Of a DNA stretch of 64,000 nucleotides, positions 4,441-37,157 are shown piece by piece. A program made the position numbers and the translations under genes. This stretch comes from Octopus sinensis (taxonomy: Eukaryota), in the NCBI RefSeq assembly GCF_006345805.1, contig NC_043000.1:79050001-79114000 (forward strand). The letters run 5' to 3'. The number at the start of each line of letters is the position of its first letter. Positions within the stretch are counted from its first letter, which is position 1. Under the pieces are notes generated by a model that was not told the DNA's origin, searched no databases, and worked only from the letters and a program-made list of their open reading frames with translations.

Positions 4441-5377
4441 TTCTGAAGTAATTTGACCAACTTTGTTATTCGTCATTTCCGGGTCAATAAATCAAAAGTA
4501 GTTAACAACAAATCATTCAATTATTGAAGTACTGAAATGCTTTTCATCACAGATCTTCAAATAGATAACTCGAATATCTAAAATGGTATTGAAGAAGTTT
4601 ACAGTTATAAATGAAACAAAAAGGTTCGGCAGATATATGTTTTATTTAAAAACGTTATGTTTGTAATATTTACAATTCTTAAAAATATCAATATAAATTA
4701 ACTGTTCTTCATCAGTAACGTCGCCTCTGAAAAGAATAAAATTACAAGAAATCAATATATTTATTAGATTGGACATACAAATTAAAAACAATAACATAGA
4801 CTAAGTATCAAGTTGGATTTATATTTCAAAATGTGTATATTAGATTAGTTGTATATATCACATTCTTTTACAACAAAGTATGAATATTTCACCAGGCGCA
4901 GAAAAGCTTAACTCACGAACTATATTCTGAAACGTGAGATAATATATAGTAAAATTTACAATTCTTTATCGCAATGCTACTTACAATGATGATCCAATGT
5001 GAAAGCTAGTCTGTTGATTTCACAAGAGTAGCAATAAAGTTAGTTGAAACATTGAAAGTTAATAATTTTCATATAGATAATGAAATATATGCAGATATAC
5101 AAAATCTCGTGTTTACAATGAAGAGAACATTGGCTTTCTTCAAGATAATGGTAGGGTCAATGAAATTGAACTACTTCAAATAAAGACAGAAATCGAATCG
5201 CTGATACAATTTTGTTTGTACGACAATGTAGTAGAGTGTAGTACAGTGAGAGCATTGCAATGTTTATGCTAAACATTATTCAATTCTTTCTTGTTTTCTC
5301 TGTTTACAATGACTAACTATATAAGGATGAGACACGTTATATTAGGGAGATCAAAACTAATAGAAAACTTTACTCAC

Positions 5378-7193
5378 CTCTTTATAACAATTGTATTTGG
5401 TACACTTGACATTTCCATTTGAACAACGACAAACATTGCATCTATCTTGAGTCATAAATGTTTTTCCATCTGGGATAGTTTTCCCATAATATTGGCATGT
5501 AGTTGGGGGACAGTACATTTTAGTACAGGATACTTGACCAAACTGTCCGCATGTACAGGTGTTGCAGTCATCTTTAAATGTTTCGCCAGCAGAATAGGTT
5601 TTCCCTTTGTGTATACAGGGTTTCGTGCATGTTTTCTGCTCACAAACCACCCTTCCCTCAGAAGTGCACTGACATTTGTTGCAATCATTATACCATATAG
5701 AACCAATGTCGTAATGCTTGCCGTTGTAATTGCAGGTACATAGATTAGTAGTACAGCCTACAGTACCATCGGCTTTGCATGTGCACGTGTTACAATCCTT
5801 TCTAAATGAATCCCCTATTCCATAGGTGTTTCCATTGTATAAGCAATTACAAGGGTTATTAGTACAGCTGACTCTACCGTTCACTTCACACGTACATGTA
5901 TTACAACCTTGTCTAAATGTTTGACCTACATTATAAAGCTGGTTGTTGTAAGTACATTTGCAAACGTTGGTTGTACATTGAACATATCCAGTTGATAAAC
6001 ATTGGCATTGGTTACAATCTTCTTGAAATGTCTGACCAATTTTATAAGACCGTCCTTTCCGTGTACATCGACACGTTTTATATGTGCACTCTACTTGTCC
6101 GTTATGCTGACATGTACAAGTGTTACAGTCATCAGTGAATGCCTGTCCGATATTATAAACTTTATGATTGTAAGTACAGGTACATGGATTTGTAGTGCAG
6201 TCTACGGTACCATCGGCTTGGCATGTGCACGTATTACATCCATTTCTAAATGTTTGACCTATATTATAAAACTGGTTGTTATAACTACATTTGCACATTC
6301 TATATGTGCACGCAACTTGACCGTTATGTTGGCATGTACAAGTATTACAGTCATCAGTGAATTTCTGTCCCATATTATAAACCCTGTGTTTGTATGTACA
6401 GGTACATGGATTTGTAGTGCAGTCTACACTACCATCAATTTTACACGTGCATGTATTGCAGCCGTTTGGAAATGTTTCTCCAATTCGGTAGGTATTTCCG
6501 TTATAAATGCATTTGCATCGCTTGTTAGAACACTGGACTGTACCACTAAACAAACATTGACATTCATCACATTCACCAAATCTTTGGCCAATATTATAGG
6601 TCCGTCCTTGGTAAGTACATTGACAGACTCTTGTTGTACAATCTACTTGTCCGTTTATACAACGGCAAGTGTTGCAAGCGTCAATGAAAGTTTGACCCTC
6701 TTGATATTGTGATTTTTGTAATAACAGCCACATCTATCACTGTTACACTGCACTGTTCCTGTAGTTTGACAGGTGCAAGTCTTACAACCATCATTGAAAC
6801 TCACTCCAACGTTGTAGTCTTTACCATTATACTGGCACTGACACACGTTATTAGTACACTGAATATAGCCAGAAGAAAGACATTTACATCTATTACATTT
6901 GTCTTGGAATTCTTCACCCTCTTGGTATACCTTTCCGTTGTAAGTACATTGTTTAGGGCAGTCTTTGTTGCTACATTGTACCTGACCACCGTGTTTGCAT
7001 TCACATGTATTACAGGATTGCTGGAATGTCTCTCCTACTCTGTAACGTCTACCTTGATAGATACAAGTAGATTCCTGCCCGTAATCACAACGTAAATTTG
7101 TACAGACTGCTTTGCCATATTCACCACATACACACGTGTTGCAGTCGATCTTGAATCTTCCTCCATACTTCTTTCCATTATGTGTACATTCGT
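5378..7193 (-). CDS. single large internal exon encoding 16 tandem six-Cys VWC N-terminal-half / pacifastin-like modules (secreted kielin/chordin-like-annotated type protein); 1-nt frameshift at 6713-6717
   Basis: ORFs 6655-7236 and 5357-6733 share the repeat C-x16-C-N-x-C-x-C-x3-G-x3-C-T-x3-C. Acceptor ttttcctttacAG at 7195-7194 (phase 1); donor GAG|GTGAGT after 5378. The 1816-nt exon plus one base gives 2+605 codons, consistent with a single missing A. Confidence 0.85.
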
Positions 7194-7269
7194 CTGTAAA
7201 GGAAAACATCAACTGATAATTATTTCCATTAACCACAGAAGAGTTATCTACTGAAAATGAATATGTATA

Positions 7270-7314
7270 TCCTAAAGTAATTCCTCACATACATACAGAC
7301 ATACAGACATACAG

Positions 7315-7364
<50 letters not shown>

Positions 7365-7495
7365 ACATACACACACATATATACACATGAATAAATACAT
7401 ACATACAACATATGTATATACATGGACGTACTTGAATATGAAGGTACAGGTATATAAACATATATACATATATATATATGTATATACACGCATTT

Positions 7496-7546
<51 letters not shown>

Positions 7547-7595
7547 TATATATATATATATATACATACACACATGATTAAATACATACATACAT

Positions 7596-7638
<43 letters not shown>

Positions 7639-7660
7639 ATGTACTTGAATATGCAGGTAC

Positions 7661-7697
<37 letters not shown>

Positions 7698-7743
7698 TTT
7701 ATACGTACATACATAAGTACATACAAACACACACACACAGACA

Positions 7744-7817
<74 letters not shown>

Positions 7818-7820
7818 TAT
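7270..7820. repeat. compound CA/TA microsatellite with internal ~190-bp duplication
   Basis: Direct reading; gtacttgaatatg..aggtac occurs twice. Confidence 0.9.
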
Positions 7821-8274
7821 AGGGAAGGGAATTTGAAAATGCAGAGGTCTTTAAAGCTGTTTATTGACCGGTTTCACTTTCTTTTAAAAAAAGCTGATCA
7901 AAAGGCTTTGTATAACCTTTGTGGTGTTAAAATTTAGTTAACATACATGTATTAAAATACAGTGATAGAGTCTTTGACAATGGTAAGAAAATGTTAAGAA
8001 ATAGAATATTTGACGAAGATAGGAGCATGTCAAGAGAGGCTTTCTGTTTAAACAGATTAGGTAAAAGTGTTCAAAATAGGCAAAATAGTTCATAAGAATC
8101 ATAATCATAATCAATATCTATAAATCTGAAATGTGAAAAGTCTGTTTGTCTGGTTTTGGCATTGGAACGGGGTAAAGGGCACTAGATCCCGTCGGATTGA
8201 CTCCAAAATTTACAGGGACATGTAAAATGAGGTGAGGATTTGAGTGGTTTAGGTTAGAAACCCCTATATAATGC

Positions 8275-8309
<35 letters not shown>

Positions 8310-8903
8310 GTGTGCATTATGTGGTCGGTTGTGCTGAACATATGCACACCTATGATAAAAGTGCTGGCGAGTTTGCATGACAACTCTAATGAAAGGCGTG
8401 ACCTCTAGGACAAAATTCCTCATCTTATAAAATGTGGCCATGGTAAACCCGAATGAAATCGGGTTATATTAACCAAAATGTGAAAAGAGGTCTAAATGGG
8501 GCTTGAAGGGGATTAAAATTTACAGGAGCGGGTGTTTAAGAATTCTCTGTTACATCAAGCTAAAAAATTTGCGCCATCCTTTCAATCGTCAATGTGATGC
8601 CGTCCATGATGAAGAAGTTTTGAATGCTTGCCATGGTGAGTCAACTGTCATGAGAAAGAATCACTTCAAAGTTTGGTGTTTAGGAATTTTCTTTTACATC
8701 AAGTTCAAAATTTTACGCCAGCCGTTAAACTGCCACTACGTTGCTGTCCGTCGTTAAGAAATGCCAGCCATGGCGACTCTACTATCCTCAGATTCTATCC
8801 CTTCAAACTTTGGTTTCCAATATTTTTTTTTATTCAGCTCGTAAGTTCGTCTGTCCCTTTTAAATGTTAGTGTTTTGCTGTCTGCCTTGAAGCAGACCGT
8901 TCC

Positions 8904-9357
8904 GTTGTTACTGCCTGATATTTATGATTGATCTTTCAAAATATTTTTCTTTCTCAACTTACTCAAGATCTTTTGTCGTTTATAAATGGGAGAGAGATAG
9001 ATAGAGAAAGATAGAGAGTAAGAAAAAGCTAGGGAGAGTCCGAGAGAAAGGAAGAGTAAGAGAGTGGGAAAGTGAGAGAATAAGAAGCGAGAAACATAGA
9101 GGGAGAATGCGGTGATAAAAACAGAAAGGAAGCAACAGAAAGTAAGAACCTCACTCTTACCCGCGCGTAGAGCGGGTCACCTTTGCGAAAAGTTTGTTTG
9201 TTTTGTTTTGGTTTCTCTCGGACTCTCCCTAGCTTCCTCTTACTCTCTATCTTTCTCTATCTACCTCTCTCCCATGTTTAAACAACAAAAGATCTTGAGT
9301 AAGTTGAGAAAGAAAAATATTTTGAAAGATCAATCATAAATATCAGGCAGTAACAAC
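8904..9357. repeat. foldback: 146-bp inverted arms (8904-9049 / 9212-9357) around a ~160-bp spacer
   Basis: gttgttactgcctgatatttatgattgatctttcaaaatatttttc... is reverse-complemented by ...gaaaaatattttgaaagatcaatcataaatatcaggcagtaacaac. Confidence 0.9.
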
Positions 9358-9530
9358 CAAACAAAGGAAGCAACAGAAAGTAACAACCACACTCTTACCC
9401 GCACGTAGAGCGGGTCACCTTAAGATAGTTGTTTATATTTCATAAGAAATCATAACTTTTTATAAGTTCAAAGAAATCGTAGCATATATACAGAAAGATT
9501 TTGTAGACAGTATTTGATAGTAGGTGGAAA

Positions 9531-9775
9531 CGCGTGGCTTTGTGGTTAGGGTGTCAGCATCATGATCGTAAGATTGTGGTTTCGATTGCTGGACCGGGCG
9601 ACGCGTTGTGTTCTTGAGCAAAACACTTCATTTCACGTTGCGTCCAGTCAACAGAGCTGGCAAAAATGAAGAACGCTGTGATCGACTGGCGTCCCGTCCA
9701 GCTGGGTAACACATACGCCATAGAAACCGGGAAACCGGGTCCATGAGCCTTGCTAGGCTTTAAATGGGCGCATTT
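9531..9775 (+). mobile_element. tRNA-derived SINE (family with tgtgttcttgagcaa(a/g)acactt core)
   Basis: tRNA-like head tggctttgtggttagg...gtttcgattgc; core shared with the copy at 57483. Confidence 0.75.
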
Positions 9776-12700
9776 ATATTATTTGATAGGAGAAAGCGTG
9801 TATTGCTTTGTCAAATGTTCATTAGAAATGATAATTATTTATAAGGACTTTAGAGGAATGATCACAATATGCCCATTCCCCAGTAAAAACACACAGACAC
9901 ACAAAGAAGAAGCACACACATATACACACGCAATACAATTCCAACAATCACAACAAAAACTCACAGGTACACACATACACAAATACACCAGCACGTAGAC
10001 GCACACACAGCACAGAAAAATAACACATGTACATAGACACACACATGCACACACACCCGAAAAATACATGAAACACACACACACACACACACAAACGCAT
10101 ACCCAGTATAACTACGCACAGTATGTACACGCATACACAACACACACACGTACACACCATCCTTATAAACGTAGCACACAAGGACACACACGCAATTATA
10201 TTATTATCATTATTATTAATATTATTATTATTATTAAACAGCAAAACGTCAGAAAAATATCAGAAACTATCTGCTACTCAAATGTTTCATGTACACGTTC
10301 GTCGCATAGTTTACTTTGAGAATTTGAGAATATTAGATTCTCAGTCTAAACCGTCAGACGAGCGAGAACGTGAAACTCTGAATAGCAGGTTTTTCTGCTG
10401 ATTTTGCAGCTTTAATAGTACTAAAGCATATTACTCTACCTCCGGTTTGCCAGTGCTATATTTTAAATATTAAATGACTATTCTCTATTAATATTTACTT
10501 TTCAATATTTAATTTGCTCAATCAGACAATCAATACTTCATTTCATTTCTTTCTTACTATATATTCTATATCCTATATTAATATTAAAAGAATATAAATA
10601 AAACATAGACAGAGTTGGAATTCCTTTGAGTAATCTATTCTTCTATACACAATCATACAAACCCCTTTGTATATATACGTATGAATAAATGGTTGATAAA
10701 TTAAACTAAATAATTAAGAAGGAAAACGTCGCGAAATAGACAATGTACGGCAATATAATTTACTTACAGCTGTTCACACATGAAATAGCTACTATTACTA
10801 GTAACAATTTGTACAACATGATGGTCAGTTGGTTTCTCTTTCCTCAGCGTCTTGGAGATCGGTGATGGTTGTCTTGTGACACAAGGGCAAGTTTGAGAAA
10901 CGTCTTAATAGAGCTCTTTATATAGTTCTAAGTAAACGTGATCAATTATTTAAACTGAATTAATTCAGTTGGCTTAATTATTTACATTAATTCTATATTT
11001 ACAATCACAAATTTTCCCTGCAAAATGAAATATTCAAAAATGGGTGGATCTTTTTTCCTTGACATTATGTTAATTAGTTAAATGTTTTAATGATTGTTTC
11101 ATTAATGAATACATTAACGTCACATGTTACTTAATGTGCTCATAGATATTAAAGCAGATATGAAATAATTGTTGCAGTATACGTTACACACCTCAATACC
11201 GAAATGCAAATGTTCATGTATTCATTCAATCCTTAAGAATAGTTTTTGCAACTTTTTCTGAACATACAATGCCTGCACCCAACCCAAAGAAAATAATTTA
11301 GCTTCGATTCTCGTGTCTTTTCACATGTTAGTCAAAGACGCATTTTCCAGTTTAAGGAATTTTGTCTCCCTTTTACATTTTTCTAACAGGCCACTTTTAT
11401 ACCAACTTTAATTGTGCCTAACTGGTTATACACATATTTGTGTATGGCTGAGGTCCACCATACAGAAATATATCTCCATACAATACAACATAGTTCACAA
11501 ATATTTCTCCATACAACATTGTTCACATTCATACCGGTTATTTGTGTATGGCTGAGCTCGGCCATACACAAATAGCCAGCATGGATGTGAACTACGTTGT
11601 ATTGAGATATATCAAATATTCTAATAGAGAGATAAACGAAACCTAATTAATAATAAATTAATGATAAATAGGATCTTAGAGTATCATATGTTCATAGGAT
11701 TACCCGTACCTTTAAATACTTTAGATGCGGGTAATAAGTATATCATACTATGATTTGGTAGCACAAGTTATTCGGGGTGTCATATCATTCATAGCATACC
11801 CTCTATTATCTCGAAATCTATGAAGTATTGCTTTCTAATAACTCTTAACCCCTTTGATCTGTAATCTTTTAATAATTATATTATATATTTACACCTTCAG
11901 TATTGGAATTCTCTTCGCTCGTGGTTAGTATACCATATAAATTTACAATGGATTACTAAATCTTGCACCTCACTTAAATATGAGATATAACCCCAAGGAT
12001 CTGTTATTATTTTGCATAGATCAGTGTATTCGATGTATTTTAGAAATATTTTTGTAACCCATTTCCAAAGGTATCTTTATTTTTTAATTATATATTTGAT
12101 ACTTATATTTTTATTTTATATGGTATTCATGATAATAACATATCTAAGAGTTTTTTCAATATATCAATATAACTTATATCTTAATTTATAAAATAATCGT
12201 TATTTTATTTTATTTTGACTTATCCTTACTTTTATGTGTGTTATACCTTTTATATCATTCTGTAAAGAAATATCTTATAAAACTGTTTTTAAAATGTTTA
12301 TTTTTCATATTTTATATTAAATTTATGTATTCATAAACCTTCCTATACATTTGTCTAGCTTCTATATCTTATAAAGTGTTTATAACTTCTTTTCATAAAA
12401 CTCACTGTACAAGACAATTTTATATTTTAGATTTATAATTACACATTGTTTTATAAATTTTTTCTATCTATTTTTGATATTTTTATACATTTGTATATCC
12501 TTTCATAAACTTTCCTAGCGTTTGTAATTCATAAATAATTCTTTTATAAGGTCGTTTTATATAATTTACTGGATATGGGAATCCTTATTTTAATATATTT
12601 TTTAATCACTCTATATTCATTAAATGTTTACATGCCCAAGTAACGCTTTTATACATTTAGTATACCTCTAATTCAATTACCTCTTATATTCGATACATTA

Positions 12701-14130: not shown

Positions 14131-16066
14131 ATACCTTTAGTTCCTATAAGTAACTTCTACCAGTCTATAAAATTCGACCTTTAACTATCTTCTTACATTT
14201 CACTTCCACTAAATATATGTATTTCCACGCCTTTAATCTTTATTCCTGTTCACCTATCGCACTATATTTCTCCACTTTTAGTTTTCTGATAATTTCTTTC
14301 TCTCTCCTCCTCTTTCTATAAATTGCCGTTGATGTTATATCTGTTAACAATTTTTTTTTAAATAACTTACCAATGTTCCCTTCATCATATATGCAGTAAT
14401 CACATTCGGTTGAAATGTCTTATTGATGCATTTTGTTTTTCTTTTTCCATTATGAGAAGAATGCATTGTTTTACATCATTGTATTAATTCTGGAACAATG
14501 CCAACGTTTCCTTCGAAACATATGTCGGAAGTATAAAGATTTGAATAATACCTGCGTTTAACTCCATTTATTTACTTATCTATGTGATACAAAAACCTTT
14601 CACCAAAATCTGGAATTCCTACCTTTATAGGTAGGCTGTTACATCTTTGGTACTTATGTGAATTTTTGCTACCCTGGTAACTATTTATTTATTCTTTCCG
14701 TGTTATTTGTAAACATTGATAAAATGCACATACATTTATGTGTGTGTGTGTTTGTGTGTGTCTGTGTGGTGTATGTGTCTGTGTATGTGTGTGTTTGTGT
14801 TTATGTATGTATGTGTATGTGTGAGTATGTGTTTGTCTCTCCACCATCGCTTGACAACCGAGGTTGGGCATCTCTGAATTGACTGAAATATTTATCTTCC
14901 TTATAAGATATTTTTCTTATAAGATATCTCGCACCTCAGCCGCCAGTTCGGAACAAAGTATATGGGTGGCACACGAAGTAGCGGAGTAAGAAAAAAATAT
15001 TTTTTTGATCAGTAAATAGTATTTACTGACCTCTGATGAGAAAGCTAAAGCCTCCAGTCAATTCAGAGTTGATTCACTTGTTATCTGGTACTGAAGAGAA
15101 ATTTGAAATGAATCTACTAATCCACAGGAATTTTGTAAGCTAAATTTGATGCTTTTAACACCTTTCATCCGACGTGAGAATTTTTCTCTGCGGCATACGT
15201 CTCTCAAATTATCTTTTGATGAGTCAAATATGTCCCAAACATATTTGAACGGATCAAAAGTTTTATTTTAAAACAGTTCCCATACACACATGTGTATATG
15301 AATGTAAATATATACATATACATACATACTACATATATAAATATATCTATGTATGTATGTATGTCATTATTCTGTTTTATTTCATGATTTCTTGCCAATA
15401 GAAAAAAAAGCTGTTTTCTAACCTAGATCCAAAGCTTTTTCATTGGAATTTTAACATCAACAAGGTATTTTTGTGCGTATTTATGTCATTATTCAATTTT
15501 ATTTCAAGATATTTGTCAATAGAGAAAACGTCGGTTTTTAACCAAGGCATTGGAATTTCAACATCAACAGGGTAATTTTGTATGTATGTATACGTGTAGA
15601 TTCGTAGGTTTTGTTTTATGTCTGTCTTCTCATGCATATAGATAAAACCCAGAGCCTATGATACCAATCATGTAGGCAATACAAACATTGTCTGGAAGAA
15701 AATATATCCTAGATTTCGGTATCAGAAGATGATGTCACACGCATTTAAAGTTTGTATGAAAGTGTCATGTAAGAAAAATATAAGGGGAAGCCCAAATTTC
15801 TTAAACCGGATAATGCGACTTTGACTTACAGGTGGAAAGACGCGTGAATGTAAATTACATTATTTTCTTTGTATTGGGCGTGTGCATTTAATGTTCACAA
15901 AAAATTACAAAAGCCTTTTCTCAAGAATTGTATGAAAGCTGGAATGGAGTCATTTGGATTTTTGGTATCAATGTGTATAGTGTATACTTCAACAATTTTG
16001 TTTTTTTACATTGCTTTTAGTGTTTGTGAACACATGAACTAATATGTGAGATTAACGTATTCATAA

Positions 16067-16465: not shown

Positions 16466-16959
16466 ATTATTGAATCAATCTATAAAATGGCAAGGAAAAA
16501 GGATCCACCTATTTCTGAATAGTTTATTTTGCTGTGAAAATTTGCGAATTTAAAATACTTAAGCCAAATGAGTTTCAATTTAAACAATTGATCACGTTTA
16601 CTTCGAGCTATATAGGGAGCTCTTCTAAGACGTTTTTCAAACTTGTCCTTGTTTCACAAGACAGCCATCACCAATCTCCAAGAGGCTAAGAAAAGAAAAT
16701 CCATCTGACCATCATGCTGTACAAATTGTTACTAGTGATAGTAGCTATTTCATGTGCGAACAGCTGTAAGTAAATTATATTGCTGTACATTGTCTATTTC
16801 GCGTCGTTTTTCTACTTAGTTATTAACTTTAGTTTATCAACAATTGATTCTTACAGTTCACCTCTACCTAAATCTCTCACGCGTGCCTGAGTGTATATTT
16901 AATGCGTGCATATTTGTGCCTGCGTTTCCCTCTCTGTCTCTTTCTTTACACACACACAC

Positions 16960-22892: not shown

Positions 22893-25568
22893 TTAACGGT
22901 ATCGAACCGGTGGCAGAATGTTCTTTCTCCATCTGGTGGATCTTGTGCTTCGCACCGGTGTCTGAGGTGTGTTGTTGGGCTGCTGATAGGTGGTTGGTGC
23001 ACGTTGGGGTGATGATTCTGTGGGTGTTGTCACTAATGCTGCAGGTGTTGTACACGTTGTCCTCGACAGCTCTGGTTTTGGGCGGATGTGGGCCCTGTTG
23101 CGTCTCAGCTGCCTACCAGATTCCGTTTCTATTAAATATGATCTTGGAGTTTCAGCTCTACTGACAACCTGTGCTGGGATCCATGTTTTAGTTATGGGAT
23201 CTTGAGTATGCACATGTTGTCCTCCAAGTACCTCAGGTAAATATTGTGCATGTTTGTTGTAATACCTCTGTGATTGTTCTTGAGTGGCTGCTAGCTTTGC
23301 CCTTGTTTCTTCCTGGTCAATAGGAGGTTGGATCTTAGTTGGCAGGGTAGTTTTATACTTCCTGCCATTCAGCAATTCTGCTGGGGATTTCATATCAGCT
23401 CTCAGTGGTGTCGCTCGTAGGGACAGAAGTGCCAGGTGTGGGTCTTCCTTAGTCTCTCGGCATTTGACTAGTGTTCTCTTCACTGTCTGCACCTGTCTTT
23501 CTATAAACCCATGGCCTTTGGGATAGTGTGGAGATGAAGTTGTAATATTGAACCCATACTCATCGGCTAGCTTTTTGAATTCTTGTGATGTGAACTGGGT
23601 TCCATTGTCACATATGATCTGCTCTGGTATTCCTTGCTCTGCTAGAAGTCCTCGAGCTACTGTGGTGATTGTTTTGGTTGTCAGGTCTTTCACTTTTCTC
23701 ACAAATGGAAATTTGGAGTAGTAGCAGGCCATTATCAAATACCATTATTGGCCCTCTGTGAACAAATCTACTCCAATAGTTTGCCATGGCTTTCTTGGTA
23801 TGTCACTAGATATCATTTCTTCCTTTTGTTGTGAGTTTCTGTACTTTTGACAGATGTGGCATGTAGAAACTGTCTTTTCTATGTCTTTATACATGCCTAC
23901 CCAATATACTGCTGACTTGGCTCGGAGCTTGCATTTTTCCATTCCGAGATGCCCTTGGTGGATCTTGTCAAGAATTTCTTCTTGCATTGACTTGGGTATA
24001 ATTATTCGGGATCCAGCCATCAGGATCCCATTCTCCACTGATATATCATCATGGATGGCCCAATATTCACGAATCAGGGGTTGCACCTGATGTCTCTTTT
24101 CTGGCCACCCCTGAATCACCATCTGAGTAAGGAGCTGAAGTTCTTCATCTTTGCTGGTCTCCTCTTTGATTTCCGCTAGCTTTGTGGTTGTCACATTTAC
24201 AATGTGGTGGACCTTTATGCTTAGTCCTTCCATCTCCTGTTTGTTTGTGATTGGTGGTCTGTCTTTGATAGGCATATCACTGTCAATCCTGCTTGGAGCT
24301 GCTTTCACTTCAGCATTGATTGATACAATATTTAGCTTTTTGCAGGTATTGAGTCCAAGAATTGCTGGCCCTTCTGTTCTTGTGACATAAAAAAAACACT
24401 TAATTAATTTTCCTTTGTGTGTCCCTGTGATAGTTGTTTTACCCAGTTGTGGAATCTTGGTTCCTCCGTACGCAATGAGGATTAGATCACTTGGTGTGAG
24501 GATTCCTTGTTTGACTTTATCCTCTTTTGTTATGTGTTCTGGGAACATCTTTTTGTATAGGTTGACAGGTAAGATATTACTCTGGGCTCCAGTGTCAATC
24601 TTTAGTCTTAAGTCTATGTTTGTTCTTTTCCTTCCGGCCTTCTTTTGAATTCTTATTGTCGTGTATGCCTCATCTTCTTTCTTCCGGTCGACCTTTCCCA
24701 TCTCATGCACATTTATTATGCCGACTGCCAAGAATTCCTCCTCTGAGGTGTGTTGTTCCTGTTGTTGTGCATGTATATCTCTTCTATTTCTGCTCCTCTT
24801 TGAAAATTGGGGCTTGTATTTCTGGGATTTTGTTAATCTACACATTTTTTCCCAGTGGTTAAGTTTTCCACATGCTTTGCAGTGTGTACCGAATGCAGGA
24901 CATTTTTTTCGGTTATTAAATTCATGCTCTGTACCACAGTTCTGGCTTGTTCTTTGTTTGTGGGTATGTGTCCTGTGCCTAAATACAATATCTACACTGC
25001 TATCTAGTGAGCTTGTTTGCAAGCTAAGTGAGGCCATTTGTTTGGTAGTGGCTTCAAATACTCTTGCAGTGTCTACTGCTTCTACCAACTGGAGAGCGTC
25101 CTTACCTATTAGTGATTTTTGTACTTCTTTGTGGGCACACCCCCATATTAATTGGTCTACAATTCTCTCCTCCCTGTCTTTGAATTTGCATTTCTCTGCA
25201 ACATTCTTCAGTCTTGACAGGAAATTGTCAATTGTTTCTTGTGGGTCTTGTTTCAGGCCCTGGAATTCGTATCTGTGAATTCTATGGTTCGACCTGGGCT
25301 CTAGGTGCCTTTCAAATTTCTCAAGAAGTGTGTCTGGGTTATTGCAGTCCGATTCTGACATATCCCAGCTATTGAATAGGTCTATTCCTTTATTACCTGA
25401 CCATAAAATGATATAGCTTACCTTCTCATCGTCAGTTGTGCCTTTCAGGAAACTTTTGAAAGCTAGTTGAGTTTTTTGTTTGAATTTTTTAAATGCTTCT
25501 ACGACATCACTAGAATCCCAGTTCATAATCGGATGTAGATTCATCTGTACGGCGACGGGGGTCGCCAT
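22893..25568 (-). pseudogene. Gypsy gag-protease-integrase polyprotein with in-frame RT/RH deletion and one in-frame stop
   Basis: Gag with CCHC-like knuckle, protease KIDTGAQSNIL, integrase HHCC (HQGHLG...CHIC) and D..D..E core (VDLF, CDNG, IER). TAA at 23745-23747 separates two same-frame ORFs. Confidence 0.9.
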
Positions 25569-25908: not shown

Positions 25909-28822
25909 CCTTCTTTCAAACACTTTTTCTATTCAGTTGCTATGCTTGACCGCTAAATCCACAAGTTTTTAAACTTCCATACTCACTACGTTATTACTTT
26001 GCCTTTCTCTCTCCTTTTCTTAATTGTTTCTTTTCTTTTTTCCTTTTTCCACAATGCCCGATTACAAATTCTTCCTCCTGAACCTTCACCGCCGACTAAA
26101 GAAACACCTTCTATTGCTTTCAACCTTCTATTAATCTTTCCCATCTGATTTTCAAAAAAACACGCTTCTGTAGTCATGTTTACTTTCTCAGTCACCTCCC
26201 TCACCCCTACCTCATCCCCAAAGGTTTCCGCCTCCATTTCCACCCCACTTTCCACTCTGCTTCTGCCATCCTACCCATACTCTGTTCTACTTCTTACCGC
26301 CTTATCAGTGCCACCATTCGTTCTAATCTCTTTAAAATACACACCCCAGACCACCTTCTCCTTCTCGCTTATTCCAGCTTTTCCTCCCGTCTTTCACCTT
26401 CTGTTGCACATTCCACTCTACGCTTCATACGCCATGTAAATCATGTTTTGTCCACGAGTTCCTCGCTCGCACTAAACAACATAAACTCCACTCACTCCAT
26501 TTTCCCCAGCCGACGCCACTACACCCACGCTTTCCTCATCCTCATCCCCCATACTCATCCCCACCCTTCCATTACTCTAATCCCCAAGCACTTACTTTCC
26601 CTCTCTCTCCTCCCAGCTTTCTACTGCCACGCCACCCCTTCCACATCTAACTCATCCACCCACTCCCGACTTCAGTCTGTTGTTACAATTCCTCCTAATC
26701 TTCCCCCTCTCTGAAACGGAGCGCTCTCTTCTCAGTAAGGATCTGCGCTTCATCTCCCTCACTTTATCCAGTAACGAATTTTAGACCCGTGCTGGTATCC
26801 ATAGCTTTGTGCGTCGCATCAGGCTATATGCACTATTCCACAACACTTCACCTGCATCTAATGAAGAGGACTGCTTCACTGACCTGGGCCGCCGACCATC
26901 CTACTGGACGCCAGCTCCTTGCCAGTTCCAAGCAGTTGAACGTTTTGCATGCATCTGCCAACGTGTGTGGACCGGTTTAACTTTCGCAGCAAACCCCAAC
27001 ATTTTAACATCTCCCCGGACGAACTCTCGACATTCCGATGTCTTCGACACCGCAAAGACATCATCACAAAGGCGGCCGACAAGGGTGGAGCCGTGGTGGT
27101 GTAGCGCGCAGACCTCTACAAGGCTGAAGCTCTACACCAACTTCAAGGAACCTCATTTTATTGCCCTCTGCCCTCTGCCCTCCAACCCCAAGCCTAACTA
27201 CCAAGAGACTGTGTCCACCACTATCTATGACCTCACTTCCTCCAACCTTATTATCTACACTCCACGCACCCCACCATTTACTTCCTTCCCCAAATCCACA
27301 AGCCCAACAACCCTGGCTGCCCCATCGCCTCCGCCTCTAACTGCTCCACGGAATTTATTTCTAAATACTTCGATCGTGTCCTTGCCTCCTAGTGGCTTCC
27401 CTCCCCTCCCACATCCATTACACTAAACATGTGTTCCGTCTCTTTAACTCTTTCTCCTTCCCTTCTGGCCCTTCTAAACTTCTCTTCATTATTGATATCA
27501 AGGGTTTATATACGGTGATCCCATACAACGAAGGACTTCTTGCACTTAAACACTTTCTGGACCTTCGACCCAACCCCGAACCTTCGTCTGGCCGAACTTG
27601 TTCTCCCCCTCAACTGCTTCTCGTTCGCGGGTGATTTTTACCAACAGATCTCTCGGAAGTGGCTATAGCAACGAGAATGGGCCCCAACTACATGAACTTG
27701 TTCATTGGCTACGTTTCACTGGTCCCACTCACGAACTATACGGTCGCTATATCGATGACTCTGTCGGTACGACCTCACTCTCCCGCGAAAAACTAGACTC
27801 CTTCGTCTCTTTTGTCTAATCCTTCCAGCCTGCCATCGAATTCTCCTCAATTATTTCCAACACTTCCGTCGAATTTCTCGACATTTCGGTTAGAATATAC
27901 CACTCCTCTCTCACTGTCTCCATCCACTACAAACACACTGATTCATGTTCATACCTCAACTTTTCCTCCTTCCACCCTATTCACATCAAGCTCTCCATTC
28001 CCTACTCTCAATTCCTCCGTCTGTGCAGGCTCTGCAGTAACAACCATGACTTTGAGACTCAGTCTCAACACATGGCTCAACAATTCGCCCTTCGTGAATA
28101 TCTCCTCACCACTATCCACATAGCCCTTGCCAAGGCATGCTCCGTGGACCGTACCTCTGCTCTCTCCCTCACACCTGCCCCGCCGTTGCTCATCTCCCGT
28201 TTCCACACACCCCTCTAACGCATCATTTTCCGAGACTTCCGGTGACTCCTATCCGTCCCCTCCACTTCGCACATCTTCCGAACCTACCCCTTCCCTCCTT
28301 CAAAGAGCCCACAACCAGCGTGACCTCCTGGTCCACAGTTTCTTCCCTAACCCCACCTCCCAGCCTGGATCATAGCCCTGCTCTTGCCCACGCTACAGTG
28401 CTTGCCCCTACATCTCCAACACCAATATTTTCTTTTCTTTATTTTATGAATATTCTTATATATATATATATATTTACATATCCACACCTATTTTGAATAT
28501 CTTTCTATATACCTTTATATACTCACATGTAAAGCCTTATTCTTTATATTTTTCTAATTTACCTTATTTCACACACTTTCTAATTTATCATGTTCACAGG
28601 ACTTGCCCTTTATGGCCATCCACTATATTTTTCTATTATTACATTTCCTATCCACCGTAATTTAAAGATTTAAAAACGCTACGTCAAACATATACACGTA
28701 TATTCAAACAAACATGTATCCTTATCATGTTTTTCCCTTCTATCTCTATTTTCCAATTTTCTTCTCTTCCTCTCTCAGTTGAAATTTTTCTCGCTCTTCT
28801 TCTCTCACACCAACTTCCTTCA

Positions 28823-29731
28823 TCTATATATATAATAGTGAAGTTGTGTGAGTGTCTGTCTCCTACGATTTAGATTCCTAACTACTCCCACATTTTGCGG
28901 TGCAGTTTAACCAAATTCGGGTACCTTATAGTCGTGATTCATATCGAGCCCTTCTGAGTATTAGCGCGCGTCTACGATGAGTCTACGATTTTAAAAATAA
29001 TTTAACATTATTTTTTCCATTTTAACGCATATTTTTTCGTGTGTCGATGGCGGCGGAGTTGGCGTCCATGCTCACACCTGCACCTGTGTTGCTTCTCCCC
29101 CTTCTTCCCTCCCTCGTGAAGCTGTGGGGAAGGGAGTGTAAGGAAATCAACGTCGTAAAGCGTTGTCAAGGAGACCAGCGTTCTTTTAGAACAACGACTT
29201 CATGGCTTGAAGTCGCCAAAACAGAAATCGCTAAAAAAGCTGAAACAGATCCACAAAAACGGCAAAAACCGCCACACATGGTAGGTTTCCTGTGCAAACA
29301 ATTTGCACAACCGAATGTTTTAGTTGTTGCACAAATCTTTATATATAAAAGTGAAGTTGTGTGTCTGTCTCCTACGATTTAGATTCCTAACTACTCCCAC
29401 ATTTTGCGGTGCAGTTTAACCAAAACCGGGTATCTTATAGTCGTGATTCATATCGAGCCCTTCTGGGTATTAGCGCGCGACTATGATGAGTCTACAATTT
29501 TAAAAATAATTTACCATCATTTTTTCCCTTTTAATGCATTTTTTCGCTATTATATAAGGGAAGTAACTCTTTAAAAATGTCTACGATGAGTCAACGATTT
29601 TTAAAAAATTTACTATAATTTTTTTTTCCATTTTTAATGCATTTTTTTGCTATTTTTTGGCTATAACTCTCTAAAAATGCTTTATAGTTATTTCCCATAC
29701 AAACCCGAGCAACGCCGGGCGATACTGCTAG
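28823..29731 (+). mobile_element. non-autonomous Helitron with internal tandem duplication of its 5' part
   Basis: A|TC start, 3' hairpin cccgagcaacgccggg then CTAG|T; the 5' ~200 bp is repeated near 29340. Confidence 0.85.
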
Positions 29732-30409
29732 TTTTTATATATACATATTATATATTTATTTATCTTACCCTTTATTATTGTTATTTTCTGTGTGGAACAT
29801 ATTCGCCCTTAATTTTTACTATCCCATTAATTTTTAAAATCGTTTATTCAACTCATTTCAATTTTCCATTATTTTAAAATATGTTGGGACCTTGCATCGC
29901 TTTGCCTGAAATTTGAAACCAAATCCACCAGCTTGTTGTTTGTCAAAACGAGCTACTGTCCTTTCAACTACCTGTCGGGCAAACGAATATATATATATGT
30001 AAATAATATTTCTTCTTGGTGTTGATTCTTCAATGTTCAGTGGATACTCCGACGCGAAAACCTTTAAGCGTTACATCTATACGCTACATTCGGTAGTGGG
30101 CTACATCATATCGACATGATATGGCATCTCACATTCAGCACACTACAAATACTTCAAGTTATCTTCTTATTCCGAATACTTACGACTGTCTGACAAACGG
30201 TTACATTGAACAACTTGGTAAAAATTTTTGCAGCCTCAATATAAAATTTTATTATTCTTTTGGTCTTAAAGTATTATTTTCTCAACCTTGTTTTTGCACT
30301 TACCTGCTCACACGTGTAGTGTATGTGTATAAATACATAGACATACATTCGTACATACATACATACATACATACATACATACATACATACATACATACAT
30401 ACATACATA

Positions 30410-32712: not shown

Positions 32713-33760
32713 ATGGAATTAGACTTAAGTTCAAAAAAAGACTTTCCCGAGATGGGAGAAGGTATAACAACTGTTAAACAAAAGGAAACACAGGCAAAAC
32801 CCAGTTTTTCAGACGCCGTAGGTGGCGAAGTGGAAGAAATGGGGGTGTCAATGACTATTCAAGTTCAGACCGCTTGTGCAAAAAAGTGAAGAAACTCGAT
32901 TGGTACCGCCCCCTGAAACTATACAGGCAATAAGGGAAAAAATGGTCACCTACAAGGTGTACAATATGACCGACGTAAAAAACGAAATGGTCGAAAAAGT
33001 GTATGGCACCAATATGGAGTAAAGTTCGTCATGTCAACCGAGGTGCAAGAAGCGCCACAGTGGAGGCGCATTTTGAGACGGCGGAAGAAGCAAGGCAAAT
33101 TTCGACGCAAACGTTGAAAAACGAGAATATAATACTGCTACCCTTATATTTAGGGTGCAGAACAGCAAAAGTGACCCTAGAAGATATACCAAGGGTCTAC
33201 AACGTTGACAATTTTGAGTATGAAGAGGAAAATTGCAAAACACTGGAGAGGCAGCAGCTGGAGATGATTATCCAGGCGGAAAATGCGATGCTGGAAAGCC
33301 TACCAGACAGAGTCTTCGTGGGGGAGGGGCACTCCATACGAGTTTCGGTGGAAGGATGCAGGCCCAGATGTTTTAAGTGCGGGCAAAAGGGTCACATTCG
33401 CTCCGTTTGCTCAAAGAAAAATAACACGAGCAACGCCCCCCCAACAAAACGCTGTGAAGAACGCAGAAAGCAGCGAAGTGGAGAACAAAGTAACGAAGTG
33501 GAAAACAAAGTGGAGAACAAAGCAAGGAGGAAAAAAAAACAGGTCGAACTCCAAAAAGGAGGAAGACAAGAACGAAATGCAAAATGAGAAAGGAAAGGAG
33601 GAGGAAATTAATACAACAAAAACAAATATACAAGAAGAGATGGAATTCACGAACGTGTCGAACAAAAGGAAAAAAATCCATCACCCTTGACTCCCCACCC
33701 GTAACAAAAAAAAAAAAAACGCAGACGAACAAATTAAAAATATTCTCCAATCCCACCCCG
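32713..33760 (+). pseudogene. Tx1 copy A ORF1 (gag-like, CCHC knuckle), frameshifted
   Basis: ORFs 32701-32889, 33003-33587 and 33283-33690; CFKCGQKGHIRSVC. Confidence 0.75.
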
Positions 33761-34193
33761 GCGGTACTACATTTATAGGCCAGCACTTTAACAAACCCCA
33801 CCCCCCAACTGTAAAAGGGTTTAAACCCAATGAGAAAATTATAGCATACACCACAAGGAACGAGAGAGCAGTAAAATGTGTGCAAGCAAGTACGCAGATC
33901 AGGTTCTACAAAGTGACCGAGAAGGAAGCGGAGTGGCGATATGCAAGTGTCGGCGAAGAAGGATGGAAAGGAAAAAACTTACAAGACCTCGTAAAAGCCG
34001 GCTTCATTAAGGATGTCACCCAGGAGGTGACAACTGGGAAATTATACGTCAGCCCGGCAGCCACACCAACCCAGAGTCCGGTGGCAACGCCGGTGAAACG
34101 CCCAGCAGCAACGGCGAGTGGTGGGGAGACAGGCAGAAGGAATACGTCAGGCTCCCTCTCGCAACCGTGAGTAAATAATTTTCTTTTTTTCCG

Positions 34194-36150: not shown

Positions 36151-36151
36151 T

Positions 36152-36780
36152 GAGAACTGCGAAACTATATGTGGAACACATACCAAGAGGATATGATATA
36201 ATGTGGGTAGCAGCGGCGGTTCTGCACGACGTAGAGCAGAAAGTCTCAATTCTGCAGATGAAAAGGAAAGAGGAGGTAAACTGGAAGGGCAAGCGCTCGA
36301 ACTCCTCGTTCAAGCAGAAAATAATGTGCTAGAAAACTTACCCGATAGGGTATTTATTGAGGAGGGAATTACAATGAGAGTGTCAGTGGAGGGGCGCAGA
36401 CCTAGGTGTTTCAAATGTGGTGAAAAGGGTCACGTCTGCTCGAACTGCATATAAAAAAAAGAAAAACAGCGAAGCCCCTCCTCAAAGTGCTTCAAACACA
36501 GAAAAAGAAAAGGCGGAAAAAGACCCCAAGACTGCAACAAGGAAGGGAATCGAAACGGAAGATAAAAATGAACAAATGGAATTTACACAGGTGACACACA
36601 AAAGAAAAAAAGAAAATACTCTGGACTCCCCTCCCCAAACAAAGAAAAAATCAGCAAACACCGCAGAGATACATACAAAACAAATTCCCCAGCCCTACCC
36701 CCACGGCACTGTATTCATTGGAACACAGTTCGCCAAGCCCCTCCCCATAAAACAAGATTGGAAAAAATTGATTTAAAAAA
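36152..36780 (+). pseudogene. Tx1 copy B ORF1 3' part
   Basis: RTAKLYVEHIPRGY aligns to copy A RTAKVTLEDIPRVY; RPRCFKCGEKGHVCSNC. Confidence 0.8.
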
Positions 36781-37157
36781 ATGAAAAGATTGTAGCATTC
36801 GACGAGAGGAACGATAGAGTGTTCAAGTATTTTAAATTTTCAAAACTGAAATTATTCAGTAAGTCTGCAGACACTAAGTCGACCACACGTTTTGCAAAAA
36901 TAAAGGAAGACGAGTGGAAGGAAAAAACACTCCAAGAACATTTTTAAAATAACGTTATCAGAGACGTAACTAACGAAATACTGGAGGGCAAACTTACTAT
37001 AACCCCGGCAACCATACCTACCCAGAGCCCGATGGCAACGCCGGTTAAGAGCCCTGCAGCTACGACCACAAGGGAGGAAGAAGGGGAAGCATGCAGATTT
37101 AAACTGTCATGCTCCCTGTCCCAACCGTAAGTTTATTTTTTTTCTCTCTCTCCGACA

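What the first reader, a model, noticed from the sequence alone, without database searches (positions are those of the whole stretch)
5378..7193. One exon encoding 16 pacifastin-like six-cysteine modules with variable putative reactive loops
Seen: every module fits C-x14-18-C-(N)-x-C-x-C-x2-3-G-x3-C-(T)-x3-C and stops at the sixth Cys, lacking the C-terminal half of a full VWC domain. Established: this matches the pacifastin (MEROPS I19) inhibitor consensus, best known from arthropods, where the residue after C-T is P1. Putative P1 residues here vary: CTYRMC, CTYKTC, CTKMYCPP, CTKYNC, CTTRVC, CTNLRC, CTTNPC. Inference: a mollusc multi-headed protease inhibitor or adhesive polyprotein that would normally be mis-annotated as kielin/chordin-like. 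The first spacer (16 aa) is longer than in canonical pacifastins (9-12) and there are no dibasic sites between most modules, so a VWC-SD1 structural role is the alternative.
Basis: partly seen in the sequence, partly recalled or inferred. Interest (0 to 1): 0.7.

Follow-up and report, generated by a model that had tools for sequence, protein, structure and literature searches.

The report
Octopus secreted 16-module pacifastin-like gene
This is the main exon of an octopus gene for a secreted protein made of 16 small disulfide-knotted modules of a kind already described in molluscs. The modules resemble insect protease inhibitors and the spacer modules of mucins equally well, and the reading frame is broken by one base in this assembly.

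Summary
On the minus strand, 7193..5378 holds exactly 16 six-cysteine modules (96 Cys) between a good splice acceptor and a donor-like GTGAGT. The frame shifts by one base inside module 5 (about 6704-6712), so the assembly as written encodes only 196 residues.

I found the missing first exon, a signal peptide at 10819..10768 with a TATA box upstream. The gene therefore encodes a secreted protein made only of these modules. The transposons in the window are Octopus-type. Octopus sinensis has a homologous locus with about 22 modules, broken at a different place and annotated "serine protease inhibitor I/II-like" (135 aa).

Pfam Pacifastin_I scores 264 bits, against 200 for VWC, and 11 of 15 modules pass it alone. 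That match skips the first cysteine. Over their full length the modules match the E modules of VWF and gel-forming mucins equally well, by sequence and by predicted fold.

A 2026 paper already describes this "ancestral-type" pacifastin-like domain, with its N-terminal hairpin, as common in molluscs. Inhibitory function remains untested: putative P1 is K or Y in 4 modules and T/N/S/Q in 12. Verdict: new member of a known kind, modest interest.

The parts
10917..10924 (-). TATA-like box (tatataaa) about 100 nt upstream of the start codon
   Evidence: Read directly from the sequence. The block 10692-10945 aligns with the promoter and first exon of the O. sinensis gene.
10768..10819 (-). Coding part of exon 1: signal peptide MLYKLLLVIVAISCVNS plus one base (phase 1), followed by a gtaagt donor
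   Evidence: tblastn with the O. sinensis signal peptide gives 76% identity. Sequence read. The phase fits the 'AC' that opens exon 2, giving junction codon T|AC.
7194..10767 (-). Intron 1 (3574 nt), with a microsatellite block at 7287-7821 ((ACAT)n, (AC)n, (AT)n)
5357..7193 (-). Exon 2: 16 six-cysteine modules, short tail YKEVSKVFY, stop codon at 5359-5357
6704..6712 (-). One-base frame break inside module 5, next to a run of five A; the window is one base shorter than the O. sinensis copy here
7087..7188 (-). Module 1 (C5-C6 loop CTNLRC)
   Evidence: Pacifastin_I 34.6 bits
6958..7065 (-). Module 2 (CSNKDC)
   Evidence: Pacifastin_I 28.6 bits, VWC 27.5 bits
6841..6948 (-). Module 3 (CTNNVC)
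   Evidence: Pacifastin_I 29.9 bits
6730..6837 (-). Module 4 (CNSDRC; Lys instead of Asn after Cys2)
   Evidence: scanned alone it matches only VWC2L_2nd and FnI_RECK, about 17 bits each, both below their cut-offs
6623..6726 (-). Module 5 (CTTRVC), interrupted by the frame break
6515..6619 (-). Module 6 (CSNKRC; Asp instead of Asn after Cys2)
   Evidence: only FnI_RECK at 17 bits
6404..6511 (-). Module 7 (CTTNPC)
   Evidence: Pacifastin_I 27.6 bits
6293..6400 (-). Module 8 (CTYRMC; Tyr at putative P1)
   Evidence: Pacifastin_I 36.1 bits
6182..6289 (-). Module 9 (CTTNPC)
   Evidence: Pacifastin_I 28.8 bits
6071..6178 (-). Module 10 (CTYKTC; Tyr at putative P1); 84% DNA identity to module 8
   Evidence: Pacifastin_I 33.5 bits
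5960..6067 (-). Module 11 (CTTNVC)
   Evidence: Pacifastin_I 32.8 bits
5849..5956 (-). Module 12 (CTNNPC)
   Evidence: Pacifastin_I 30.4 bits
5738..5845 (-). Module 13 (CTTNLC)
   Evidence: Pacifastin_I 34.7 bits
5627..5734 (-). Module 14 (CEQKTC)
   Evidence: Pacifastin_I 29.3 bits
5510..5617 (-). Module 15 (CTKMYC followed by PP; Lys-Met at putative P1-P1')
   Evidence: Pacifastin_I 39.7 bits, VWC 29.7 bits; AlphaFold2 model pLDDT 94
5387..5497 (-). Module 16 (CTKYNC; Lys-Tyr at putative P1-P1')
   Evidence: TILa 25.9, VWC 24.8, Pacifastin_I 22.9 bits
5372..5377 (-). GTGAGT donor-like hexamer, probably unused; it encodes Val-Ser of the conserved tail
4559..4902 (-). Non-coding block collinear with O. 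sinensis (70% identity), likely 3' UTR; AATAAA at 4765-4760 and 4646-4641
16574..16854 (+). Inverted second copy (88%) of promoter and signal-peptide exon (ATG at 16714, intact gtaagt donor), head-to-head with the gene; no module exon follows it in the window
   Evidence: no further modules found

Best explanation
SHOWN:
- This is a two-exon octopod gene on the minus strand. Exon 1 (10819..10768) encodes a 17-residue signal peptide.
- Exon 2 (7193..5357) encodes nothing but 16 tandem 34-37-residue six-cysteine modules and a 9-residue tail. The mature protein would be about 610 residues, 15.7% Cys, pI about 8.3.
- Each module is predicted to fold as an N-terminal beta-hairpin plus a three-stranded sheet. 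This is the published 'ancestral-type' pacifastin-like domain.
- Over its whole length the module equals the E module (TILa) of VWF and gel-forming mucins and the N-terminal subdomain of VWC. Its last ~26 residues equal the arthropod pacifastin inhibitor core.
- In this assembly one base is missing inside module 5, so only 196 residues are encoded as written.

INFERRED (mechanism):
- The modules, mostly joined by one-residue linkers, form a semi-rigid string of beads stapled by 48 disulfides.
- I think it most likely acts as a polyvalent standard-mechanism (Laskowski-type) binder of serine proteases. The exposed Cys5-Thr-P1-P1'-x-Cys6 loop would dock in the protease active site.
- Heads 15 and 16 (Lys at P1) would suit trypsin-like enzymes. 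Heads 8 and 10 (Tyr at P1) would suit chymotrypsin-like enzymes.
- The twelve Thr/Asn/Ser/Gln heads would serve as spacers or bind other partners.
- The frame break is either an assembly error at a homopolymer or a recent inactivation.
For: Gene structure:
- Splice sites, phase and signal peptide fit together.
- The homologous O. sinensis gene XP_036362608.1 has the same two-exon layout.

Family:
- Pacifastin_I 264 bits; 11 of 15 modules pass it alone.
- A profile of 122 modules hits solved pacifastin inhibitors at 29-37 bits, and E modules of MUC5AC, VWF, MUC2 and FCGBP at 31-34 bits over the full module.
- The module 15 model (pLDDT 94) superposes on trypsin-bound SGPI-1 and SGTI at 0.8-0.9 A with 50-53% identity, and on MUC2/VWF E modules at 1.3 A over 37 columns.
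- The three-module model has pLDDT 90.9 and pTM 0.54.

Long-term function:
- dN/dS is 0.09-0.39 between paralogous modules, with dS of 0.7 or more.
- dN/dS is 0.14 between the window and O. sinensis for modules 14-16, which lie downstream of both frame breaks.
- All 96 Cys are kept.

Inhibitor reading:
- The protein contains only these domains plus a signal peptide. PMC13388995 describes arthropod pacifastins as consisting only of such domains; E and VWC modules of the solved proteins sit among other domain types.
- Lys-Met and Lys-Tyr at P1-P1' are conserved between the two octopus copies.
- CTKMYC(PP) recurs in mussel and oyster relatives.
- K-M and K-Y are the pairs reported as enriched in the ancestral lineage (PMC13388995).
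- 'Pacifastin' proteins are detected in octopus posterior salivary gland and ink proteomes, alongside many serine proteases (PMC7693380, PMC10142993).
Against: - No non-arthropod member has been shown to inhibit anything; PMC13388995 says so for its non-metazoan homologues.
- Twelve of 16 putative P1 residues (T x5, N x5, S, Q) are poor fits for S1 pockets.
- The C5-C6 loop is no more variable than other surface positions (entropy 1.9-2.9 bits, against 2.4-2.8 elsewhere). It is conserved between the two octopus copies. The hypervariability typical of inhibitor contact residues is therefore absent.
- One-residue linkers may hinder docking on the primed side.
- The same 'C-N-x-C-x-C ... C-T' signature occurs in mucin and VWF E modules, which are structural spacers (PMC7599080).
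- Both available copies of the gene have a broken frame.
- No expression data were available for this gene.
- The disulfide pairing could not be read from the models.
Confidence: 0.4

Rival explanations
1. Structural or adhesive secreted protein. The 16 modules act as a stiff, disulfide-stapled spacer or binding string in mucus, ink, egg coat or extracellular matrix. It would bind partners by beta-strand addition, like fibronectin FnI strings, or simply provide length, like the TIL/E bridges of mucins. It would have no protease inhibition.
For: - Full-length sequence and fold matches to E modules of MUC5AC, MUC2, VWF and FCGBP.
- E modules are described as spacers (PMC7599080).
- The three-module model resembles fibronectin 2F1-3F1 pairs (TM about 0.48).
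- Most loops carry T/N rather than good P1 residues, and there is no loop hypervariability.
- A VWC/pacifastin protein is found in the Lottia shell matrix (PMC4094399).
- The O. bimaculoides paralogue P0005 has mucin-like Pro/Thr linkers.
- PMC13388995 links the ancestral type to matrix proteins.
Against: - The protein has no other matrix domain, no PTS linker and no N-glycosylation sequon.
- Pacifastin_I outscores VWC wherever both match, except in module 16; TILa reaches its cut-off only for the whole array.
- The Lys-Met-Tyr-Cys-Pro-Pro loop is conserved from octopus to bivalves. That is easier to explain by a docking function.
Confidence: 0.35
2. The gene is dead or dying in this genome. 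The one-base frame break is real, so only a 196-residue product, or none, is made. The array is a recently inactivated pseudogene. This concerns present status and is compatible with either ancestral function above.
For: - Frame break in module 5.
- The O. sinensis copy is broken independently. It has a deletion of non-3n length joining modules 3 and 4, a Cys1-to-Ser change, and an in-frame fusion of two modules.
- Its annotated product is only 135 aa.
- No protein closer than 39% to the 443-residue downstream part exists among 5.8 billion clusters, although three Octopus proteomes are included.
Against: - Downstream of the break, 443 codons remain open (chance about 6e-15).
- All Cys are kept there.
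- dN/dS is 0.14 against O. sinensis. Any inactivation must therefore be very recent.
- The break lies beside a homopolymer, the typical place for long-read assembly errors.
Confidence: 0.35
3. A BMP-binding chordin/kielin/crossveinless-type regulator, as the 'kielin/chordin-like' labels on relatives suggest.
For: - The VWC profile matches all 16 modules (200 bits).
- Relatives are named kielin/chordin-like by automatic annotation.
Against: - Only VWC profile positions 1-36 of 57 match. The C-terminal subdomain with its CC-x2-C motif is absent from every module.
- Full VWC structures fit poorly (5nir and 5nb8, rmsd 4.7-5.0 A, 26-30% identity).
- There are no CHRD or other chordin/kielin domains.
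Confidence: 0.05

Closest known systems
'Ancestral-type' pacifastin-like domains (PLD) of molluscs and other non-arthropods (Rodriguez-Aguilar et al., Sci Rep 2026, PMC13388995)
   Same: - Six-Cys scaffold with Asn after Cys2 and Gly in the C4-C5 loop.
- N-terminal beta-hairpin extension rich in Gly, Tyr and Phe.
- Few dibasic sites in the linkers.
- K-M and K-Y P1-P1' pairs, and Thr at P1.
- Mollusca is the second-largest group in that study.
   Different: - This gene is not annotated beyond a 135-aa fragment in O. sinensis.
- It is an unusually long pure array (16 modules here, about 22 in O. sinensis), mostly with one-residue linkers.
- The paper does not mention the E modules of VWF and mucins or TILa, which match these modules over their full length.
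Arthropod pacifastin inhibitors (MEROPS I19, Pfam PF05375; e.g. SGPI-1/2, PMP-C, PMP-D2, SGTI; PDB 2xtt, 1gl1, 2f91, 2vu8)
   Same: - C2-to-C6 spacing, the C-N-x-C-x-C and C-T-x3-C motifs, and the three-stranded core.
- 48-55% identity and 0.8-1.1 A rmsd over 30-32 residues.
- Profile scores of 29-37 bits.
- The protein consists only of such domains.
   Different: - The Cys1-Cys2 spacer is 14-18 residues instead of 9-12, and forms an extra beta-hairpin. The Pfam match starts after Cys1.
- No dibasic processing sites.
- P1 is mostly T/N.
- No inhibition has been shown.
E modules (Pfam TILa, PF12714) of von Willebrand factor, MUC2, MUC5AC, MUC5B and FCGBP
   Same: - Whole-module match including the first hairpin and Cys1. 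Profile positions 1-42 align to VWF 827-865 and to MUC2 E'.
- 37 columns, rmsd 1.2-1.5 A, 43-51% identity.
- From my own knowledge of the VWF D' structure, not tested here: six Cys paired 1-4, 2-6, 3-5.
   Different: - E modules always follow a TIL module inside VWD-C8-TIL-E assemblies and act as spacers (PMC7599080). Here there is no VWD, C8 or TIL, and the modules are repeated 16 times head to tail.
- Pfam TILa reaches its cut-off only for the whole array (31.4 bits).
VWC domain (PF00093) of chordin, kielin, CCN and procollagen IIA
   Same: N-terminal subdomain: the Y-x-x-G-x-x-F/W hairpin and the C-x2-C-x-C motif. The VWC profile matches all 16 modules.
   Different: The C-terminal subdomain is absent (profile 1-36 of 57). 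The fit to full VWC structures is poor (rmsd 4.7-5.0 A).
Fibronectin type I module strings
   Same: The three-module model aligns with 2F1-3F1 pairs (TM about 0.4-0.5). The FnI_RECK profile scores 120 bits over 16 stretches.
   Different: FnI has four Cys and a different disulfide pattern. Sequence similarity is weak.

Membership tests
Pacifastin inhibitors (MEROPS I19 / PF05375) | Profile HMM score above Pfam's gathering score (27.9 bits) | tested here: met
   Whole exon: 264 bits, 15 stretches. Scanned alone, 11 of 15 modules pass (28.6-39.7 bits). Module 7 scores 27.6, module 16 scores 22.9, and modules 4 and 6 give no hit. The match always covers profile positions 4/5-30 of 40 and leaves out Cys1.
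   The C2-to-C6 part fits all 16 modules (Asn in 14, Thr in 12, Gly in 16). The C1-C2 spacer is 14-18 residues in every module, longer than 9-12.
Pacifastin inhibitors (MEROPS I19 / PF05375) | Three-stranded antiparallel sheet core superposable on solved inhibitors | tested here: met
   The AlphaFold2 model of module 15 (pLDDT 94) was compared with 2xtt, 2f91, 2vu8, 7snc and 1gl1. Rmsd is 0.8-1.4 A over 30-32 columns, with target-normalised TM (TMt) 0.70-0.82. This is a prediction, and those entries may have been in the predictor's training data.
Pacifastin inhibitors (MEROPS I19 / PF05375) | Disulfides Cys1-4, 2-6, 3-5 | not testable with these tools
The pairing is inferred only from the close superposition on solved relatives.
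Pacifastin inhibitors (MEROPS I19 / PF05375) | Standard-mechanism inhibition of serine proteases through the P1 residue two positions after Cys5 | not testable with these tools
   Sequence only. P1 for modules 1 to 16 is N, N, N, S, T, N, T, Y, T, Y, T, N, T, Q, K, K. No assay was possible.
Ancestral-type pacifastin-like domain (PMC13388995) | [quoted passage not shown] | tested here: met
   The 36-residue modules have invariant Tyr8, Gly11 and Gly27, and Phe/Trp14. The model shows two extra strands (residues 4-6 and 9-11) before the three-stranded core.
Ancestral-type pacifastin-like domain (PMC13388995) | Linkers poor in dibasic processing sites | tested here: met
   None of the 15 linkers has a K/R-K/R pair. 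The five dibasic pairs in the protein lie inside modules.
E module / TILa (PF12714) of VWF and gel-forming mucins | Sequence and fold match over the whole module | tested here: met
   The module profile matches MUC5AC, VWF (827-865), MUC2, MUC5B and FCGBP at 31-34 bits per module over profile positions 1-42. Foldseek gives 37 columns, rmsd 1.2-1.5 A, 43-51% identity. Pfam TILa scores 31.4 bits for the whole exon (cut-off 27), and 25.9 bits for module 16 alone.
E module / TILa (PF12714) of VWF and gel-forming mucins | Position after a TIL module inside a VWD-C8-TIL-E assembly | tested here: not met
   Pfam finds no VWD, C8 or TIL domain in the product. No further coding exon with such content lies in the window.
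VWC domain (PF00093) | Ten-Cys domain with a C-terminal subdomain (C-C-x2-C) | tested here: not met
   Every module stops at the sixth Cys. The VWC profile is matched at positions 1-36 of 57 only. Full VWC structures fit at rmsd 4.7-5.0 A.

The most novel reading that the evidence does not exclude
The gene encodes a giant polyvalent pacifastin-type inhibitor (16 heads here, about 22 in O. sinensis). Its heads would carry different specificities (Lys, Tyr, Thr/Asn), and the number of heads would change quickly between octopus lineages. It would be deployed in saliva, ink or mucus against prey, pathogen or the animal's own salivary serine proteases. This would be the first experimentally tractable non-arthropod pacifastin. 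It would also link the inhibitor family directly to the E modules of VWF and mucins.
Probability: 0.25. Interest if true: 0.5.

Novelty: new member of a known kind. Interest (0 to 1): 0.3.

Why it matters
- It adds a well-delimited gene (promoter, signal-peptide exon, module exon) to a class so far described only by computation. It also shows that genome annotation largely misses it: the O. sinensis counterpart is annotated as 135 aa out of a 22-module exon.
- It gives a concrete caution for the published 'ancestral pacifastin' class. The Pfam hits for Pacifastin_I, VWC, TILa and FnI_RECK here fall on the same residues. Reported 'co-occurrence' of pacifastin with VWC domains in mollusc proteins may therefore be one domain counted twice.
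- The class is as close to the structural E modules of VWF and mucins as it is to the insect inhibitors.
- If single modules inhibit proteases, octopus would provide the first functional non-arthropod pacifastins. If they do not, the inhibitor function is an arthropod novelty built on a structural module.

Tried and rejected
- Exact look-ups of the 458-aa ORF and nine other ORFs of the window found nothing in the protein and contig collections.
- My first heuristic scan for a signal-peptide exon found only microsatellite artefacts. The exon was found only after the O. sinensis homologue supplied a query.
- Searches for further module exons or paralogues in the window found none. These were a Cys-pattern scan in six frames and tblastn with 120 homologues.
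- Test for hypervariable reactive loops: negative.
- I first took the conserved block 4559-4902 for a possible downstream exon reached through the GTGAGT at 5377. It has no open frame in either species, so I rejected that reading.
- A tiny intron cannot explain the frame break. Module 5 is complete apart from one codon position.
- One literature query was too broad and returned nothing useful.
- The source species could not be fixed. DNA identity to the O. sinensis locus is only 71-78% (dS 0.4-0.9). The window is therefore either another octopod species or an old paralogue.
Full report
**1. What is in the sequence**

The feature lies on the minus strand. Translation of 7193..5378 gives 16 consecutive modules with 96 cysteines. 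Spacing is C-x14-18-C-x2-C-x-C-x6-7-C-x4-C, and 11 of the 15 inter-module linkers are a single residue.

The 5' boundary is a good acceptor, a polypyrimidine tract followed by AG at 7195/7194.

A six-frame scan of the whole window for the C-x2-C-x-C...C...C core gives 16 matches, all in this exon. The open stretches are far longer than chance allows at this composition.

**2. The rest of the gene and the organism**

A gag-integrase ORF of an LTR retrotransposon in the window is 83-96% identical to copies from Octopus vulgaris and O. sinensis. The source is therefore an octopod.

A search with the downstream 443 residues found nothing closer than 39%: a chiton 'tenascin-X-like' protein, then oyster, mussel and O. 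bimaculoides 'kielin/chordin-like' proteins, and many myxobacterial proteins.

A search with the upstream 161 residues found XP_036362608.1, 'serine protease inhibitor I/II-like' of O. sinensis, 135 aa and 70% identical. Its locus (L001, CM016868.1) has two parts:
- a signal-peptide exon 13 kb upstream;
- a homologous module exon with about 22 modules.

With that signal peptide as query I found the window's first exon:
- ATG at 10819, encoding MLYKLLLVIVAISCVNS;
- a gtaagt donor after 10768, in phase 1, which fits the 'AC' that opens exon 2;
- a TATA box at 10924-10917.

The gene is thus signal peptide + 16 modules + a short tail. It most likely ends at the stop codon 5359-5357, for three reasons:
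- homologues end right after the last module;
- the tail VSKVFY-stop is conserved in O. sinensis;
- the next conserved block (4559-4902) is non-coding, with AATAAA at 4765 and 4646.

**3. State of the reading frame**

At the break the window is one base shorter than the O. sinensis copy, whose frame is intact at that point. The encoded product as written is 196 aa.

The O. sinensis copy is broken elsewhere. It has:
- a deletion of non-3n length joining modules 3 and 4, which is why only 135 aa are annotated;
- one Cys1-to-Ser change;
- one in-frame fusion of two modules.

Selection has nevertheless acted for a long time:
- dN/dS between paralogous modules is 0.09-0.39, with dS of 0.7 or more;
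- between the window and O. sinensis, modules 14-16, which lie downstream of both breaks, give dS 0.94, dN 0.13 and dN/dS 0.14.

The breaks are therefore recent or artefactual. I did not write out or search with a frame-corrected product (see referred steps). Searches used the two pieces apart, or an X at the break.

**4. What the module is**

*Pfam.* For the whole exon:

| Family | Bits | Stretches | Profile positions matched |
|---|---|---|---|
| Pacifastin_I | 264 | 15 | 5-30 of 40 |
| VWC | 200 | 16 | 1-36 of 57 |
| FnI_RECK | 120 | 16 | 5/6-40 of 40 |
| TILa | 31 | 7 | best stretch 2-40 of 55 |

Scanned alone, 11 of 15 modules pass the Pacifastin_I cut-off and only module 15 passes VWC's. 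The pacifastin match always leaves out Cys1.

*Solved structures, by sequence.* A profile built from 122 modules of this gene and its relatives was searched against PDB sequences:
- the E modules of MUC5AC, FCGBP, VWF (827-865, i.e. E'), MUC2 and MUC5B match over the whole module, at 31-34 bits each;
- the arthropod inhibitors (SGPI-1/2, PMP-C, PMP-D2, SGTI and others) match over positions 9-42, at 29-37 bits.

*Predicted fold.* An AlphaFold2 model of module 15 is confident (pLDDT 94). It has five strands: a hairpin plus a three-stranded sheet. Foldseek places it as follows:

| Target | Aligned columns | rmsd (A) | Identity |
|---|---|---|---|
| MUC2 / VWF / MUC5AC E modules | 37 | 1.2-1.5 | 43-51% |
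| Pacifastin inhibitors | 30-32 | 0.8-1.4 | 48-55% |
| Complete VWC domains | 42-43 | 4.7-5.0 | 26-30% |

A three-module model has pLDDT 90.9 and pTM 0.54. Its best tandem match is to fibronectin FnI pairs.

*Conclusion.* The module is the E-module / VWC-subdomain-1 fold, and the arthropod pacifastin is the same fold without the first hairpin.

**5. What is already known**

- A 2026 paper (PMC13388995) describes exactly this class as 'ancestral-type' pacifastin-like domains. [quoted passage not shown]
- That paper states that inhibition by its non-metazoan homologues has not been validated in vitro. It does not mention mucin or VWF E modules.
- 'Pacifastin' is listed among proteins of octopus posterior salivary glands and appears in the ink proteome (PMC7693380, PMC5554399, PMC10142993).
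- A VWC/pacifastin protein occurs in the Lottia shell matrix (PMC4094399).
- E and TIL modules of mucins are described as spacers (PMC7599080).

**6. Function**

Putative P1, two residues after Cys5, reads N, N, N, S, T, N, T, Y, T, Y, T, N, T, Q, K, K for modules 1 to 16. Only four are classical P1 residues.

The C5-C6 loop is no more variable than other surface positions. Between the two octopus copies P1-P1' is unchanged in modules 1, 2, 14, 15 and 16. The CTKMYC(PP) loop of module 15 recurs in mussels and oysters.

I favour a polyvalent standard-mechanism protease binder with a few active heads (confidence 0.4). A purely structural or adhesive string is close behind (0.35). A BMP-binding role is unlikely (0.05). 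Independently, the gene may be inactive in this genome (0.35).

**7. Verdict**

The kind is already described, and this is a new, largely unannotated member. Interest is modest (0.3).

Noticed in passing
window 16574-16854 (+), also 15742-15912 vs 11244-11414: There is an inverted, head-to-head second copy (88%) of the promoter and signal-peptide exon. Its ATG is at 16714, it encodes MLYKLLLVIVAISCANS, and the gtaagt donor is intact. No module exon follows it anywhere in the remaining 47 kb. Either a second gene has a very long, transposon-filled first intron, or this is a relic.
   Followed up: partly
L001 23282-25990 (+) (Octopus sinensis CM016868.1, about 60.327-60.330 Mb): The homologous exon has about 22 modules, including a recently triplicated three-module unit. 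It carries a frame break between modules 3 and 4, one Cys1-to-Ser change and one in-frame module fusion. Only the first 135 aa are annotated (XP_036362608.1). Module number differs between the two copies (16 vs about 22).
   Followed up: partly
Homologues P0026, P0035, P0052, P0063, P0095 etc.: Myxobacterial proteins (Sorangium, Minicystis, Polyangiaceae) carry 4-6 copies of the same module (C.Y.G..Y..G..F...DGCNTC.C...G.V.CT...C). They are 38-50% identical to the octopus modules, and some end in a Kunitz domain. PMC13388995 also reports bacterial members.
   Followed up: no
window 5357-7193 (-), deduced product: The 612-residue product has no N-x-S/T sequon, although it is 9.7% Asn and 15.8% Ser+Thr. 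Roughly nine would be expected if positions were independent. Repeat structure may explain part of this.
   Followed up: no
window 7287-7821: A 0.5-kb compound microsatellite ((ACAT)n, (AC)n, (AT)n) ends only about 90 nt upstream of the exon 2 acceptor. Similar TA/CA/TATG-type tracts are frequent throughout the window, for example 18.7-19.3, 46.5-47.1, 54.4-55.1 and 57.6-58.8 kb.
   Followed up: no
window 22893-25568 (-): An LTR-retrotransposon remnant with two ORFs of 607 and 281 aa. Pfam finds only the integrase zinc-binding domain in the first and the integrase core in the second. No reverse-transcriptase hit lies between the N-terminal part and the integrase, so the element looks internally deleted. 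It is 83-96% identical to Octopus copies.
   Followed up: partly
window 33000-39300 (+) and 60700-63500 (+): Two adjacent copies of a LINE carry an EEP endonuclease, RVT_1 and zf-RVT (ORFs at 34194-36196 and 37158-39296). The long ORFs at the 3' end of the window (60741-63466) gave no Pfam match and remain unidentified. A DUF4371/hAT-like remnant lies at 52349-53825 (-).
   Followed up: partly
window 26000-30000: A GC-rich stretch (0.48) has very strong negative GC skew (-0.48, then -0.30) and Pro/Ser/Thr-rich pseudo-ORFs on the + strand. It lies next to the LTR element and is not explained.
   Followed up: no
L001 1-26580 (+): A 1383-residue gene model in O. sinensis overlaps the locus on the same strand and ends at 26580, in the block conserved with window 4559-4902. 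Neither species has a conserved open frame there, so the model's last exon looks doubtful.
   Followed up: partly
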